From Zancudomyces culisetae HAW-14-8 (taxonomy: Eukaryota > Fungi > Kickxellomycota), in NCBI GenBank assembly GCA_052426225.1, contig JBNJNM010000011.1, forward strand, positions 2,728,001 through 2,792,000: DNA of 64,000 nucleotides. The letters run 5' to 3'. The notes below the pieces were generated by a model. It made no database searches. It saw only the letters and a program-made list of their open reading frames with translations, and was not told where the DNA came from. The position numbers and the translations under genes are program-made. Positions 27,095-48,433 of this stretch are shown here, piece by piece; position 1 is the stretch's first letter; each line of letters opens with the position of its first letter.

Positions 27095-30000
27095 CTACTG
27101 GAATTTAGATCTAAGGGCTTGATATTTCTCTAAATCGTTAAACGAGACACTAGGCTCCAGCTCGCTCAGTGCGTCCAGAAAATCTTGCTTGGTCAAAACG
27201 ACTTTTAGGTCGTTTTTATCAGCTATATTGTCCAAATAATATTGTAATTTGCTTCCATTCCCACCACCACCATCATTTCCACCACCGTGCTCATCACGTG
27301 TCTCACTTAGCTGAGTTGATATAGTATACTCCTCAACTTTTTTGTCAATGTTTTGAATAGTTCTTATGGTAGCCTTGAGCTGAGCATCAGCACACAACGC
27401 ATACAAATCAGCACCAGTCAAGTTTAAGGGGCATAAGTTGGAAACTTGCTCCAGAGTGTCCTCCTTGTTGCTTTCCAGAACCAATTTTCTAGTAAGTGCA
27501 GTCAAAATTTTGAACTGGGATTCGTGCGTCTGAGGCACACCCAAATATATCATTTTGTCAAATCTCCCAGGTCTGAGCAGTGCTGAGTCAAGAAGATCGG
27601 GTCGATTTGTGGCGCCAATAACAAACACAAAGTCTTTACTTTCACCCCCACCCCCACCCCCGCCTACACCATCAAGCTCTGCAAGCAGCTGCGAAACTAT
27701 TCGATCCATGACCCCTCCACTGTCTCCCAGCTGTCCTCTCTTCGGTGCCAAACTATCGAGTTCGTCAAAGAATACCACACATGGCGACGCTTCTCTTGCT
27801 TTGTTGAAAACTTGTCTAATCTGTCTTTCACTTTCTCCCACATACATATTTATGAGCTCAGGTCCCTTAACACTAAAGAAGTTCAACTTACTTTCCGTAG
27901 CTATCGCTTTAGCCAGTAAGGTTTTTCCAGTTCCAGGAGGACCATAAAATAGTAGCCCTGATCGCACCTTCATCCCCCCTCCCCCACCATCGCCACCACC
28001 ATTTATCTGAAGTAGAGGAAGTTGTATAGTGTCAATAATCTCCTGTTTGGCATGTTCCAACCCACCCACATCTTCCCATTTAACATTTGGTATTTTTGGA
28101 ACTCCCAGCATATTTGAAATATTCCCTCGAACTTTTTCTATTCCCCTTTCCAAGTCTTGCTTATCAATTTTAGTGGCTGTCCTGCTTCTTTTCACTGCAT
28201 CAATAGTCCCAAATTCCACAGCTCTTACGATATCCTTGGCATAGAAACTGGCCGTTTGTTTGGACATTTCTTTCGCAAGTTCCATATTTACTAACCCTGT
28301 TTTACCTATGGTGTGCCCTGTTCGTTTTTCAATCTCTTCCAAGAAAATCCTCCTACGTTGTTCAATATTTGGTGCGTTTATTGTAACCTCTTGTATATTC
28401 ATTCCATAAAACACTTTTGTTTCAGTATCCTTTAACTCTTTGGTATTATTCAATGACAGTCCTGTAACCACTACCATCGGGTACCCGCGCTCATCTATCG
28501 TCCTTTCCATTTGCTCCTTAATGACATTCTTGACTTTTCTTATAAATATATCCAACTCCCTGTTTCTACTTTCGTCGCCATACGTGACTTCAAAATGCTC
28601 AGCGATCACCTCCAGCTCGCTAAGGTATAGAACAACAGGCGCAATCTCGCTACAGTGTTCCATGAACGCCTCAATTACACCCACTAGTCCCTTTGTCGCA
28701 TTCTTAGAAGAGGATTTATTTATTTCTGCCACTATTTCACTACCTTTAACTTCATAAAAATTGTACCCCAGCTTTTCGCTTTGCCTTCTTAATATCTGCC
28801 TCTTCCCACTACCGATGTTCCCTTTTATCCCCAATGTGATTCCAATGTTCCTCCTTTTTCTTCCAAGCTTGATTGCAGAGTCCAATAATTTGTATATTCT
28901 TTCTCCCTCTTCCCTGTAAACATCTTCACCATCATTCCCTGAAATGAATGGAATCCTCATGTTGATACTTCCTGATATTACTATCCTTGTGCTTTCTTTA
29001 TCTATCGTTAATCCTATTTGATTGTCCTCACAGAACTCTTGATCACTCAGATTGCGATACTCCAGATCGCTTACCTGGTAGTAAATGTTTTTACCACCAC
29101 TCTGCCCCTCGCCATCTCCCTTGTAGGCTATCTCTGCCTCATTCCATACTTCCTCGATCTCCCCTACATCCGACATTTCGTTTGTTATTTGCGAATACAA
29201 TTTGTTTTTGATTCTGGCCTCATCTTCTCTTATCTCGAATCTCAAAATATCGCCCTTGTACATCACTCTAGATGCTTTCCCACCAAAAAAACTTTTAATC
29301 TCTGCATTTGCGTATTTCTCTATCTCTGGCTTTATTGACTCTGGAGTAATCACCCGCTTTAGCACTAGATTTTTCGCTATCGGAAACTCAAGAGTCTTCT
29401 CTTGACGCTTTTCAAGCACACATTGTACTGTTGTATCAATTTCGTCTCCATTGACCATCATACTGCAAATCAAATTTCCGCTAACGTAAAGCCCATTTTC
29501 GTTATCAACACCATCGTAACCAACTATCTTTATCACCCGTTTCCTATGCGTTTTAGGGTTTACTAGTGTTACCCATTCCCCACTAATTATCCCACACCGT
29601 GCCATCGCCTTTATTCTCATAAACCCGACTGTTCCCGCAGTATCCTCCGTACCTGAAATATCTACGTATAGCTGCTCTATTATGCTCTGCGCTCTTTCTG
29701 TACCAGAAGTTATATCTATAGGATACAGCTTTACTTGATATCCTGTTGTATCTACGCTCTCTCCTTGTAAAGTGGGGTTTTTTTCCGTTTTTTCTTCGGT
29801 TCGCTCAATCAACACAATTTTTGTGTGCCCAAATACAAATCTACCCTCTTCCTCTGGCTGACAACTCTCACAATTCATTTTTATCCATTTTTCTTTGTAT
29901 TTTACCGCATATGTTTGATGTAGCCTAAAAGAGCTCAATCCGTTTGCTATCCAAGCACCAATGACATCCTTCTGTGTCTGCAAGTCATGGAATTCCCTCT

Positions 30001-30508
30001 TTCTCGCTGAAAGAACAACCTGATCCAGAACCACTGGCTCTACAATCTCAATAGTGGCCTCAAAATCAACATATTCCTGGCCAGAAATCTCTCGACTTGA
30101 CCCATTCTCCATCTTCCACTCAATATCACTCTTAAGCCATTCATACATATTTGGATTAATTCCATAGATTTCTAGGGCGTCTTGGCTCTGGCCACAATCG
30201 CTTTTGTTTGCTGACCATTTTTTTTTATTAAAAAACTCTCTACTGTCTTTAATTTTTGCTTCTGGTAGCAATTTTACCACTCTCGTTTCATTGTCCTTAT
30301 CTATCAGCCTTTTTATGTTGATTTTTACAAATATTACATCCGGATTTTCAATCCCAGCAACTCTGAATAGCTCGGTAGGGGCTGCAAAATCACAAGACAG
30401 ATTCTCAGTTATGCCTATCCCCGTCTGGTCGTCACCCTCGTCGGCTGAAATTACAACTTTCACTTTGGTAGCACGCCCGCGTCCCCGCCTTTCCCAATAT
30501 TCTCTCAT
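27095..30508 (-). CDS. PEX6: Peroxisomal AAA ATPase PEX6
   Basis: D2 domain: PKIPNVKWEDVGG, GLLFYGPPGTGKTLLAKAIATE, KGPELINMYVGESE, FFDELDSLAPKRG, GDSGGVMDRIVSQLLAELDG. Degenerate D1 Walker A (GNIGSGKR). Confidence 0.95.
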   Translation of the reverse strand: MREYWERRGRGRATKVKVVISADEGDDQTGIGITENLSCDFAAPTELFRVAGIENPDVIFVKINIKRLIDKDNETRVVKLLPEAKIKDSREFFNKKKWSANKSDCGQSQDALEIYGINPNMYEWLKSDIEWKMENGSSREISGQEYVDFEATIEIVEPVVLDQVVLSARKREFHDLQTQKDVIGAWIANGLSSFRLHQTYAVKYKEKWIKMNCESCQPEEEGRFVFGHTKIVLIERTEEKTEKNPTLQGESVDTTGYQVKLYPIDITSGTERAQSIIEQLYVDISGTEDTAGTVGFMRIKAMARCGIISGEWVTLVNPKTHRKRVIKIVGYDGVDNENGLYVSGNLICSMMVNGDEIDTTVQCVLEKRQEKTLEFPIAKNLVLKRVITPESIKPEIEKYANAEIKSFFGGKASRVMYKGDILRFEIREDEARIKNKLYSQITNEMSDVGEIEEVWNEAEIAYKGDGEGQSGGKNIYYQVSDLEYRNLSDQEFCEDNQIGLTIDKESTRIVISGSINMRIPFISGNDGEDVYREEGERIYKLLDSAIKLGRKRRNIGITLGIKGNIGSGKRQILRRQSEKLGYNFYEVKGSEIVAEINKSSSKNATKGLVGVIEAFMEHCSEIAPVVLYLSELEVIAEHFEVTYGDESRNRELDIFIRKVKNVIKEQMERTIDERGYPMVVVTGLSLNNTKELKDTETKVFYGMNIQEVTINAPNIEQRRRIFLEEIEKRTGHTIGKTGLVNMELAKEMSKQTASFYAKDIVRAVEFGTIDAVKRSRTATKIDKQDLERGIEKVRGNISNMLGVPKIPNVKWEDVGGLEHAKQEIIDTIQLPLLQINGGGDGGGGGMKVRSGLLFYGPPGTGKTLLAKAIATESKLNFFSVKGPELINMYVGESERQIRQVFNKAREASPCVVFFDELDSLAPKRGQLGDSGGVMDRIVSQLLAELDGVGGGGGGGESKDFVFVIGATNRPDLLDSALLRPGRFDKMIYLGVPQTHESQFKILTALTRKLVLESNKEDTLEQVSNLCPLNLTGADLYALCADAQLKATIRTIQNIDKKVEEYTISTQLSETRDEHGGGNDGGGGNGSKLQYYLDNIADKNDLKVVLTKQDFLDALSELEPSVSFNDLEKYQALRSKFQ

Positions 30509-43257: not shown

Positions 43258-44462
43258 CTACAGGAGTTTCTCCAACACGTTACTCATCAACGCATCGATT
43301 CCACTTGCACGTCCGCCTGTGCTAGTGACATCTCGGGCTCTTGCCTGGCGTTGCTTGAATCGTCTCTCCACCTTTGGTTTTCCACCAGATTCTAGGTCCT
43401 CGGCTTCCTCGAGTTCGGTTAAACCGGCAGTTTTCTGGCGCTTAGCCCGATTCTTTGCCTCGATTCCATTAATGGTTTTTGACTTTTCGATATTTTGCAG
43501 GTACTCGTTCGCTTCTTTTCGGGCTTGAAGGATTTCGTTTCTCAACCGTTGCTCTTTCTCTATACGCTCAAACCCTACACGCATACACACACATATATAT
43601 ATCGTCGTATTGAGCCTTAGGATATATAAATGGAATTTAAAAATCGCAAATAATCGACTTACTTAGTTGCTCAACTAAATTTTTCCACTTGAATTTGGGG
43701 AGATATTTCAGATTCCATAAAGTTTCGAAATGGTAGCTTCGTTTTTTCCCACCTAAAATCCAAAACATCTTTTATATAATTTGTTTAAATAAATAAGGGT
43801 AACAGTCCTGATAAATTCAAATAAAATTTACCCATCGGCTGATTGTTCAGCATTTCTGCAACTGATTTTGCTACTTTCTTGTCCTTAAATTCGATCCATC
43901 CTTCAGTAAATCCTTTTCTCTTATTTCCTCCACCATTTATTCTTCGTTTTCGTACATTAGGATCTAGTATCATTTTGGAAGCAGAATGAGCATTGAAAAT
44001 ACTGATTTAAGGCTGCATTTACAGAAAGATTAAAAAAAAGCAAGACCTACCTTCTGGTGCTAAGAACATCCTCCCTATCTCTCCATATTTCTCCAACATT
44101 CTCCTGACCTTTGTGGGTTTCATAAAAGGCGGAACCCTTGACATGTATATTACGCCCGTTTTTTTCTCAGCTTTCTGGTATTCGAGAAGCTCTTCTGGGG
44201 TTAGTGGTACCACTTCTTTCTTACTCTTTGCCTTGTTCAATTTCCTTTGACGCATGTCATCGGTACTTTCAGGTTCCGAGTCTTCTGTGGATCGTTCGGC
44301 CTCTACGTATTCTTCATGATCATCCTCACTATTTAAGGTCGTTGGCTCGTTATCCTGGCATGGTTTTTTCGTTGGTGATTCCTTTTCTGAGGTACTAACC
44401 TTCCTTTTTCTTAAATTTTTTGATAGATGTATTGCGCTGGTATCTACAACGTTCGTTTCCAT
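43258..44462 (-). CDS. ESF2: Pre-rRNA processing protein ESF2/ABT1 (4 exons)
   Basis: [59 protein letters not shown], plus a coiled-coil last exon. Confidence 0.95.
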
Positions 44463-45241
44463 TTCTAGACATATATCCACTTTTATGCGTATGTGCAACT
44501 TATCCGTCTCTTGTTGTACTCTATGCTCGACTTTGATGTGTCGAATTATGGGAAATTTTGTTTTTGGCTTTAATTTTATTTAAATTTAGTTAATTAGAAA
44601 AAAAATTTTTTTTTTTGATGAAATTGCCAATTAATACGAATTTGACAGTTTGCCTCAAAGGTTTAAAAAAAGTCATAAAAAATATCGAATATGGACAAAG
44701 ACCGGGAAAAACAATAGATCGTACTCGGCAGTCACAAGACATCACATAATTTCTTTTCGCATTTGAAAGATTTGAATTATAGCAAAAACCTCTTGAGGGG
44801 ATTTTTGACCTGGAAAGATAGTTCTCTATTGTGCACATCCAAAAATTAACATTATCAGCTGCGTTTTGGTTTAAGTTTTTATAATTCACAAGAACGCAAG
44901 CGATAATAAGCTATGTAAATTAAAACTACAATATTCAATCTTGATAATAAACAAAAAAGTAAAACAGTCAAAATTTTCAAGTTAAAACTACACAAACACT
45001 TGGACCTACATGCATATGCAATTTCAGGCGTGACTCTGGTTAACATAATCTTTTACCAAATATACAACTATTTTGTGCTGAAATAAAGATGCAGAGGAGC
45101 TAAAGACGTAGGTTTACAAGAAGCGGCTGGGTCCTTCTTATTATGTCCAAGGCTGATGTCTGTGATTCTTATAAATTCGATATGGGTCTATAGTACATAG
45201 CACATATATTATAACTGCCATTGTAGACGTCACATATTCAC

Positions 45242-45659
45242 TTACATGTTTTTTTCTATTTTTGCTCGGAGCTCATTAGCATTTGCGCCAACTACTTCAT
45301 CCACCAACAATCCGCCGATAAATATCTTAAAAGTTGGCATGGCCACTATATTAGCACTTGCCGCAAGGTCCTGTTAATGAATTTTCAATTATTTTTACTA
45401 ACTGTTTTTTAATTGTGACTAAACTATATCACTATGAGATGTTACGACGATATTTATTCACAAAAACACTTACCGGATGCTCATCGACATCGATTTTAAC
45501 AAATTTGGCACTGGTGTATTCATTAGAAAGCTTCTCATACCTAGTTATCATTGACCTACAAGGACCACACCACCTTGCAAAGAACTCAGCAATGACTAAC
45601 TTGTTTTTTTTGATCGCCATGTCAAAATCACTCTTCTGTAGTACTTCTGTTACAGCCAT
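45242..45659 (-). CDS. Thioredoxin paralog A (2 exons; possible third exon to 45169 adding a PTS1)
   Basis: Exons 45659-45474 and 45370-45242. WCGPC, KFVKIDVDE, AMPTFK...EVVGAN. 104 aa. Confidence 0.95.
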
Positions 45660-48027
45660 TGTGCAATGAATACTTTCTAGTTCACTTGTGCGCTATCTCA
45701 GCCTTGTGCTCTCTTGTTGGCTTCGTTTCAGGATATTTTTTTAATTTTTATTATACCAAGTCCAAATTTTCACAATCTTGTAGTATGAAGATAAAAGTGT
45801 AAAACCAAAGTATTCACGGAATATATGCTGCATTACACCACTTTCACTTGTTTGGAAAGACATCAATACATTTTCATACATCCGCAAAGTTTTGGCCTTA
45901 TTCTTTATGTAATCAAGCCTATTTGGGCTCGCATATAAACTATCAATACAGTCAGTGTTATTTTATTTGTGTTTCTCCCTTATACCAGGAAAACTAACGA
46001 ATGAATTTCAACAGTTTTTCCTTATAATGGGCGGTTGTTTGCATATTTTAATCATGCTTGGAGTGTGTAGTGCTATATGAATCTTATTTGCTGTTGCACA
46101 GCCATACCCAATAAAGTGTCTGATATGTAAGTGAGTCTTTTACTTTTATTTTAGCTATGGATGTTATTCGAGAATAGATTTTATTGTTTATGCGCCTACT
46201 TTCGTGGGGTTTTTCTTGCCAAATCATTAAAAATGAAACGGTTGTTGGATATGTTCTAAAAATATGGTACGTTCCCATACGCAGTTACATATAAGTGGAA
46301 GCGAAACATCATTTCTATATTCTGGATACACCCCTCCTCTTTTTGGATTGCATCTAGAAGAGAAAGTTTGTTATGGCATCAATATTTGCAGCACCAGTCT
46401 AGCAGTGCAGGATCTGGGCACAAATGTGTGCCTTTCAATTCTAACCTCAAATTCTTACGTTTTTTATTTGCAAATATAGATATAAATATATGGTTGATCA
46501 ATTTCATGTATTATCCCAATGAATGTCGCTTTGAACCAATATCAGCAAATATGTATTTGGTGCAAACATAGTGGGTTCAAAGCGAGAGACTCTTGTATTA
46601 AAAAAAAACGAACCTATGTCATAGAAGCAGGTGATAATAAATACCCGCTAAACATTAGTAATCAACTTAGCCAAACGCCTTTTAGTATACCAATACACAT
46701 CGGATATGGGTAATGATATATCCGGCCTTATATCGCTTGTTCCAATGTAAATACTTTACTTTTACGCAGCGATTAGGGATTTTGTGGATTTTATACATTG
46801 TTAGGACGTTATTTTTCAGTCTATCAAGTACATTTCCACTACAAGCGCAATATTACACGCTTTCCAGACTATGGTTTTTGTATTTACTGATGGTGATACC
46901 ACCAGATACTCGGATGTTATTTGTTTTACCAAAGTAGTAATGGTGGCTTTGGTTCGGTCAAGCACTTTTTAAAAATATGTTTGTTACAAGGTATCGTATG
47001 TAGAAACTAATTTTAGAGGGTGTGTGTGTGTGGTTTAATGTAAAAACTATTTCGACATAAATACTGTCTCGGTGCAGATTAGAATACCAATATACAGCTA
47101 TATCACATCACAGGAGAACGGAGACAGCGCTTTTGCATAATACTTATGGGCCACATAAATCCTAAATTTTTTCCCCCTAAATTTGCTTTAAAAAAGCACA
47201 CTCTCGTACACCTTATCCACTACCCACAATTATCCTCTGAAGCCACAGACATGTATTTTCAATACAATCTCATTATTCATGCACTTGAGTTACAAGCAAT
47301 GAAGAAGTGCAGCTGTCAAATAGACGTTCTGTTTTCAAAGCTCAACGTAGATCGCCTATTGACGTGCCGCCTTTTCGTGTCATACCTCCCTTATTACACA
47401 AAAAATCAATCCACAATACTTTTAACTTCTGCGAATTTAACGTGTTTTGCACTACAAAAAGCCAGTAAAGAAAACAACTAGGCGAGCGGTGTGGTCTCTT
47501 GTTTTTCTTTTTTTTTGTCTTCCAGCTGTTTTAATGCAATATTTTGATCCGCAACGCACTAAATTTGTATGGGTTGATGATGGGGCATTGTAACAATTCA
47601 AGTTGAGTTGGCTCTGTAGTCGAAGAATTGCTATTAGGTTGGTCATCAAAATCCGGATAATATTGGGATCTGTGGTTGGCATAAATTGATAATCAACACT
47701 CTAAATACTTTATTTTCACACCATATTTTCCTGAGGTTTTGGTTAATTTTGGGATAATTGCAGTAAATAAAACGTTCAAGCTAAAAAAGCGATAGGCTGG
47801 ATAATTTTGTTCATCATATGCATACCCAACTTGGAATTGCACCAAAAAAAAAAATACATACATATACTCATGAAAAGAAGCGCAACGCAAAAGGTTACAC
47901 CTCAGCTAAGACTTTTTTTTTAATAAAGAGAAAGCTTTTAAAACCCTGAATATCAGAAACTTTAGATATTATATATTCCGTATATAAGAGCCTATCATAC
48001 AAATACACAGATACCCCATACACAAGA

Positions 48028-48433
48028 ATGTCCAAATTAGTAGCTGTAAATTCGGTAGAGGAGTTCCATAAAGTCGTTAACGAGGGCGAGTTGGTTGTTG
48101 TAGATTTTTACGCAAAATGGTGCGGTCCTTGTCGACTAATGATGCCAAAGGTGGAGAAATTCTCCAAGGAATTTGACACTGTAAAGTTCATAAAAGTTGA
48201 TGTAGATGAAAATGAGGTAAGAGAGTAATTAAATCTGTATTGCATATTTGATGAGTCACAGCAGACATACCTTAAATATAATTGCTTTAATTTATAAATA
48301 GACCATCGCATCCTCCGTGGGAATCTCTGCTATGCCTACGTTCAAGTTCTACAAGGGTGGGAATATCATTGACGAAGTTGTTGGTGTTAACCCTGGTCAA
48401 TTGAAAACCAAAATAATTGAGTACATGGACTGA
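48028..48433 (+). CDS. Thioredoxin paralog B (2 exons)
   Basis: Exons 48028-48216 and 48302-48433. [33 protein letters not shown]. 106 aa. Confidence 0.96.

What the first reader, a model, noticed from the sequence alone, without database searches (positions are those of the whole stretch)
45169..45250. Thioredoxin stop codon lies inside a 5' splice site; splicing would create a cryptic peroxisomal PTS1
Seen on the minus strand: ...GAA AAA AAC AT|GTAAGT...(58 nt, 45245-45188)...ACTATAG|A CCC ATA TCG AAT TTA TAA. Retaining the intron gives ...KIEKNM* (the TAA is part of the consensus donor GTAAGT). Removing it gives ...KIEKNIPISNL*. Known: -SNL is a PTS1 variant, and fungi make peroxisomal isoforms of cytosolic enzymes by alternative splicing or readthrough (e.g. 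GAPDH/PGK in Ustilago and Aspergillus). The electron donor for peroxisomal peroxiredoxins is often unclear. Inference: a splice-switched cytosolic/peroxisomal thioredoxin, implying a peroxisomal thiol-redox system in this lineage. PEX6 in this window shows peroxisomal import machinery is present.
Basis: partly seen in the sequence, partly recalled or inferred. Interest (0 to 1): 0.8.

Follow-up and report, generated by a model that had tools for sequence, protein, structure and literature searches.

The report
Hidden peroxisome tags on thioredoxin system
In a mosquito-gut fungus, both a thioredoxin gene and a thioredoxin reductase gene end on a splice signal, and using it would add a short peroxisome address tag; this points to a peroxisomal thioredoxin system not found in the papers searched, but no RNA evidence was available.

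Summary
In Zancudomyces culisetae the stop codon of a thioredoxin gene lies inside GTAAGT; splicing 58 nt to the first AG changes ...KIEKNM* to ...KIEKNIPISNL*. SNL is a working fungal PTS1. Alone this is weak: 0.4-1 such case is expected per genome by chance, 58 nt is shorter than all 16 introns I curated (79-221), and no RNA run was served.

Two further results raise it. (1) One of two thioredoxin reductase genes has the same layout: stop inside GTAGGT, a typical 81/84-nt AT-rich intron candidate, tail ending -SRI (chance about 0.02-0.06% for five partner genes under a tight, partly after-the-fact rule). (2) A Mucorales thioredoxin (Hesseltinella) has a donor over the stop at the same codon, spliced in its public gene model, though that tail (-IFL) is no PTS1.

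Against: no Prx5/Ahp1 found, both peroxiredoxins lack a PTS1, and intronless Harpellales thioredoxins lack the feature.

Verdict: known mechanism, plausible new cargo pair, unproven. About 55% that a peroxisomal form exists. The scan noted stop-over-donor genes elsewhere in this genome; the reductase case did not come up in my look-ups.

The parts
45474..45659 (-). Thioredoxin (TrxA) exon 1, 62 codons, WCGPC active site
   Evidence: Pfam PF00085 E 1e-16
45371..45473 (-). Intron 1, 103 nt; same position as in the neighbouring paralog and in Mucoromycota thioredoxins
45246..45370 (-). Exon 2, ends in AAC AT (phase 2)
45240..45245 (-). GTAAGT donor that contains the stop TAA (45244-45242) of the 104-aa form
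45188..45245 (-). Candidate intron 2, 58 nt, 33% GC; acceptor scores like real ones, only a weak branch-like ATAAT at -25; splicing not shown
45169..45187 (-). Candidate terminal exon giving I-P-I-S-N-L-stop (PTS1-like SNL)
   Evidence: SNL as PTS1:
48028..48433 (+). Head-to-head paralog TrxB (annotated, 106 aa, ends EYMD), same intron 1, no cryptic PTS1
27095..30508 (-). PEX6 (context only: peroxisomal import machinery)

Best explanation
TrxA is a cytosolic-type thioredoxin with an optional last intron. If the donor over the stop is skipped, translation ends at KNM and the protein stays cytosolic. If it is spliced to 45188, the protein gains IPISNL and a fraction is imported by the PTS1 receptor. 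One thioredoxin reductase gene (G000:C12, locus L023) uses the same switch to gain a tail ending ITSRI, so that both parts of the NADPH-reductase-thioredoxin chain can reach the peroxisome. Shown: the sequences, frames, tails, presence of peroxisomal import genes. Inferred: splicing, acceptor choice, import and function.
For: Exact layout. The same layout in one of two reductase genes: donor at L023 2442, first AGs at 81 and 84 nt both in frame, intron 21% GC with CTAAA branch-like words, AATAAA at the new stop; tight null 2e-4 to 6e-4 for five partner genes. Donor over the stop at the same alignment column in Hesseltinella thioredoxin, spliced in its annotation; NM at that column in 0 of 158 annotated thioredoxins. 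SNL works in Aspergillus and Ustilago, ARI in Ustilago. This genome's acyl-CoA oxidases end SKL/SKL/AKL and its catalases SSI/SHI. Two more thioredoxins can cover the cytosol.
Against: No RNA. 58 nt is below all 16 curated introns (79-221 nt), 10 of which skip a YAG at 45-70 nt, including intron 1 of this gene. Genome counts show no excess of donor-acceptor pairs at 47-67 nt (weak test). 0.4-1 chance case per genome. Few basic residues upstream of SNL or SRI; SRI itself was not shown in a fungus in the papers read. No Prx5/Ahp1. The Hesseltinella spliced tail is not a PTS1. The null rests on 71 gene ends and 3-10 events, and its rule was set after seeing the reductase.
Confidence: 0.42

Rival explanations
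1. The last-codon intron is real and old, but it does not control location: the acceptor used is another one (45160, 45153 or 45100, at typical distances), or the SNL tail is too weak to import.
For: Typical intron lengths are 79-221 nt, and two downstream acceptors (45153, 45100) score as well as 45188. Hesseltinella splices at this codon to a non-PTS1 tail. Many fungal thioredoxins end in ANA/ANV/ENL/ANL, so xNL-like ends may be incidental.
Against: The region past 45187 is more GC-rich than most local introns (38% to 45100). It leaves the reductase's SRI tail unexplained.
Confidence: 0.25
2. Chance: ATG-TAA-GT spells a donor by accident, it is not used to any useful extent, and both tails are coincidences.
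For: 0.4-1 such case expected per genome; 6 of 73 sampled ORF ends have a donor-like word over the stop; a PTS1-like tail (-SHI) appears in only some of several near-identical reductase loci from metagenomes; five other Harpellales thioredoxins show nothing.
Against: Needs two further coincidences (reductase tail; same-codon donor in Hesseltinella). The Harpellales genes checked are intronless and have lost intron 1 too, so their negative says little.
Confidence: 0.2
3. The intron is spliced nearly always, so TrxA is a dedicated peroxisomal paralog and TrxB and the C13 gene serve the cytosol.
For: Perfect consensus donor; three thioredoxin paralogs; TrxA is somewhat more diverged, 37-44% identity to relatives in exon 1.
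Against: The unspliced form ends exactly at the family's usual length (12 residues after GAN in 129 of 161); a dedicated paralog would not need to keep a clean stop in the donor; the intron is short.
Confidence: 0.13

Closest known systems
Cryptic PTS1 by alternative splicing: Ustilago maydis GAPDH, Aspergillus nidulans PGK (Freitag 2012, as reviewed in PMC3798809)
   Same: One gene, a cytosolic form plus a C-terminally extended form ending in a PTS1 variant
   Different: Cargo here is thioredoxin and its reductase, not a glycolytic enzyme; splicing and import are untested; Zoopagomycota rather than Dikarya
Yarrowia lipolytica malate dehydrogenase and pumpkin hydroxypyruvate reductase splice isoforms (PMC3798809)
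   Same: A small change in splicing at the 3' end decides whether a PTS1 is made
   Different: Those are shown by transcripts and localisation; here the switch would be use or non-use of a donor over the stop
Saccharomyces cerevisiae glutathione reductase Glr1, partly peroxisomal (PMC9513677)
   Same: A small peroxisomal pool of a cytosolic NADPH-dependent thiol reductase
   Different: Glr1 has no PTS1 and binds Pex5 otherwise; glutathione system, not thioredoxin
Hesseltinella vesiculosa thioredoxin ORX53154.1
   Same: AAC AT|GTAAG at the same codon, same intron 1; annotated as spliced there
   Different: 107-nt intron, spliced end -ANIFL is no PTS1; the unspliced end -KANM is the PTS1-like one; a second donor lies 31 nt further on

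Membership tests
Thioredoxin (PF00085) | WCGPC active site and whole-domain match | tested here: met
   exon 1 covers profile 2-61, exon 2 covers 63-102; WCGPC aligned
Cryptic PTS1 by alternative splicing | Two C-termini from one gene, one ending in a PTS1 variant | tested here: met
   KNM versus ISNL; SNL functional in fungi
Cryptic PTS1 by alternative splicing | Both transcripts exist | not testable with these tools
   only one run served, probably DNA, not covering the junction
Cryptic PTS1 by alternative splicing | The optional intron looks like the organism's introns | tested here: inconclusive
   donor and acceptor typical; length 58 against 79-221; no CTAAC-type branch word
Cryptic PTS1 by alternative splicing | Pex5-dependent import of the extended form | not testable with these tools
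   needs a GFP assay; Pex6 and Pex14 present; PEX5 itself not searched
Cryptic PTS1 by alternative splicing | Signal conserved in relatives | tested here: inconclusive
   donor at the same codon in 1 of 10 other-species genes, with a different tail; the five Harpellales genes are intronless; reductase orthologs could not be fetched
Peroxisomal thioredoxin system | A reductase with a peroxisomal form | tested here: inconclusive
   predicted -SRI splice form of the C12 gene; not shown expressed
Peroxisomal thioredoxin system | A peroxisomal peroxiredoxin (Prx5/Ahp1) as substrate | tested here: not met
   only two AhpC/TSA peroxiredoxins, no PTS1; four glutathione peroxidase hits not read

The most novel reading that the evidence does not exclude
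Z. culisetae sends both thioredoxin and thioredoxin reductase to peroxisomes through matching stop-inside-donor splice switches, giving a complete peroxisomal thioredoxin chain; the thioredoxin switch sits in an intron shared with Mucorales, where its polarity may be reversed (unspliced -KANM tagged, spliced -IFL untagged).
Probability: 0.3. Interest if true: 0.8.

Novelty: new member of a known kind. Interest (0 to 1): 0.6.

Why it matters
How oxidised thiols are re-reduced inside peroxisomes is open: a 2015 review states that peroxisomal thioredoxins had not been identified in mammals (PMC4444963), and my searches found no paper on a thioredoxin or thioredoxin reductase with a cryptic PTS1 (library limited to open papers). 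A matched pair of splice switches would give a directly testable case and a simple pattern (stop inside a donor) to screen other fungi with. It also adds a thioredoxin gene missing from the older annotation.

Tried and rejected
RNA test: one run served, probably DNA, no junction. Word search with exon 1 found nothing; the big protein search that followed returned multi-domain proteins only and was of no use. Readthrough as the mechanism: rejected, it gives VNM. SNL as the ancestral thioredoxin end: rejected, the unspliced end sits at the family's terminal column. Strain conservation of both tails: identical but uninformative (P 0.64 and 0.40 of no change). Ab initio intron calling was noisy; I kept 9 homology-anchored and 7 plausible introns. 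Length-window counts gave only 1.4-2.5 SD. Metagenome reductases were distant fungi and bacteria, with no consistent tail. Atlas search gave only the family name. My first scan for donors missed those over the stop through a window error, fixed.

Full report
Verdict. The sequence claim is exact.

Organism and gene. An intronless paralog from this genome is identical to Zancudomyces culisetae OMH82285.1. Contig size and count fit the HAW-14-8 assembly with 8,484 genes. The gene (TrxA) lies on the minus strand: exon 1 45659-45474, a 103-nt intron, exon 2 45370-45246; both exons match Pfam Thioredoxin. The genome has three classic thioredoxins: TrxA, its head-to-head neighbour at 48028-48433, and the C13 gene. 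The older assembly carries TrxA with two synonymous changes and does not annotate it.

Observation. GTAAGT starts at 45245 and contains the stop. The first AG at least 35 nt on ends at 45188. Unspliced ends KIEKNM (104 aa); spliced ends KIEKNIPISNL (109 aa). No other AG to 44911 gives a PTS1-like end. Readthrough gives VNM.

Is SNL a signal? It ends peroxisomal SidH in three aspergilli (PMC3709128) and two Pex5a cargoes in Ustilago (PMC9133605). In this genome three acyl-CoA oxidases end SKL, SKL, AKL and two catalases end SSI, SHI. Pex6 and Pex14 are present. The residues before SNL are less basic than in the catalases or the Ustilago oxidase (what the sequence shows).

Chance. From 71 gene ends and their real 3' flanks, a strong donor over the stop occurs at about 1.6%, and a short PTS1-like tail after a YAG at 0.2-0.6%. 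That is 4e-5 to 1.2e-4 per gene, or 0.4-1 per genome. So the thioredoxin case alone is what a genome scan would find. The estimate rests on few events.

Does the intron look real? Nine introns fixed by protein continuity are 79-152 nt, seven further plausible ones 88-221 nt. Ten of the 16 skip a YAG at 45-70 nt, and intron 1 of this gene skips five AGs, so 'first AG' is not the rule here. The 45188 acceptor scores 2.1, like real ones, but so do 45153, 45100 and 45068. Genome-wide, GTAAGT...WWTAG pairs number 1576 at 26-46 nt, 1521 at 47-67, 1664 at 80-100 and 1432 at 300-320: no excess at the candidate's length, a weak one at 80-100. This counts against the 58-nt intron without excluding it.

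First new support: thioredoxin reductase. There are two genes. The C12 gene ends GAT CAA GA|G TAG GT, a GTAGGT donor over its stop; GTAGGT is used by an ESF2 intron in this window. The first AGs lie at 81 and 84 nt, both in frame, giving EDQDSPAFITSRI or EDQDPAFITSRI. The segment is 21% GC with CTAAA words before a T-rich acceptor. AATAAA occurs both inside it and at the new stop, so intron-internal polyadenylation could be the switch (inference). The null gives 2e-4 to 6e-4 for five partner genes; a looser rule gave 1 hit in 73 ends. ARI is a proven fungal PTS1; SRI was not found tested in a fungus. The older annotation has only the 317-aa unspliced form. The C7 reductase, both peroxiredoxins and glutathione reductase show nothing.

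Second new support: a shared intron position. Hesseltinella thioredoxin has GCC AAC AT|GTAAGC in the same alignment column, and its public model splices a 107-nt intron there. That intron has a strong T-rich acceptor and a CTGAT word. NM at this column occurs in 0 of 158 annotated thioredoxins. Whether RNA backs that model I could not check. Its spliced end is ANIFL, no PTS1; the unspliced end KANM resembles one (human catalase KANL, from memory). A second donor 31 nt on would keep KANM in a spliced mRNA (inference). One hit among 12 genes has about an 18% chance at the 1.6% rate, so this is moderate support for a real intron and none for the tag. Basidiobolus, Cokeromyces, Backusella and Endogone lack the donor; Endogone ends directly in KSNL. 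Furculomyces and four Smittium genes lack it too (S. megazygosporum is N-masked 17 nt after its stop), but all are intronless.

The gap in the story. No Prx5/Ahp1-type gene was found; all Redoxin hits are two AhpC/TSA peroxiredoxins and the three thioredoxins. A peroxisomal substrate is therefore unnamed. Four glutathione peroxidase hits exist but were not read.

Mechanism, most likely (0.42): optional splicing adds PTS1 tails to a fraction of thioredoxin and of its reductase. Rivals: real intron without targeting role (0.25), chance (0.20), dedicated peroxisomal paralog (0.13).

Comparison. It would work like the splice-derived peroxisomal GAPDH and PGK (PMC3798809). Membership is not established: the transcript and import tests are open. 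No searched paper reports such forms for thioredoxin or its reductase; a review notes none known in mammals.

Procedure notes. Shared databases were searched exon by exon, by reference; the joined model was not sent to any shared search, look-up or fold, so exact look-up and structure prediction of the spliced forms were left out. One slip: my own script used exon 1 and exon 2 joined as the query of a local tblastn against loci already fetched, against the operators' note; I redid it exon by exon with the same result. Scripts also translated across candidate junctions to read the tails. The costly protein search was used once, after the word search came back empty. Pattern searches of the genome were used for their counts only.

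Noticed in passing
L023:2442-2553 (G000:C12:1265737-1265848, +): Thioredoxin reductase stop lies inside a GTAGGT donor; splicing 81 or 84 nt gives a tail ending -SRI. Deserves its own follow-up.
   Followed up: partly
L141:1898-2014 (Hesseltinella vesiculosa): Two donors 31 nt apart share one acceptor at the end of thioredoxin; would give -KANIFL or -KANM.
   Followed up: partly
window 45242-45659: This thioredoxin gene is missing from the GCA_001969505.1 annotation; that annotation also appears to merge Rad1 and the DUF155 gene next door.
   Followed up: no
window 43258-48433 and L013:4560-6315: ESF2 next to a divergent thioredoxin is shared with Furculomyces; TrxA looks like an inverted extra copy inserted between them.
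   Followed up: partly
G000 whole genome: No Prx5/Ahp1 peroxiredoxin found, but two catalases (ending SSI, SHI), eight acyl-CoA oxidase hits and four glutathione peroxidase hits.
   Followed up: partly
L013, L017-L020: Smittium and Furculomyces thioredoxins are intronless, while Zancudomyces TrxA/TrxB keep an intron shared with Mucoromycota.
   Followed up: partly
L140:1501-1913; proteins P0101, P0330, P0052: Several fungal thioredoxins end directly in PTS1-like KSNL, KAHL, KANL or TANL.
   Followed up: no
window 45537-45542: TrxA has Thr-Arg where relatives have Ala-Pro or Pro-Lys after the active site (loss of the usual proline).
   Followed up: no
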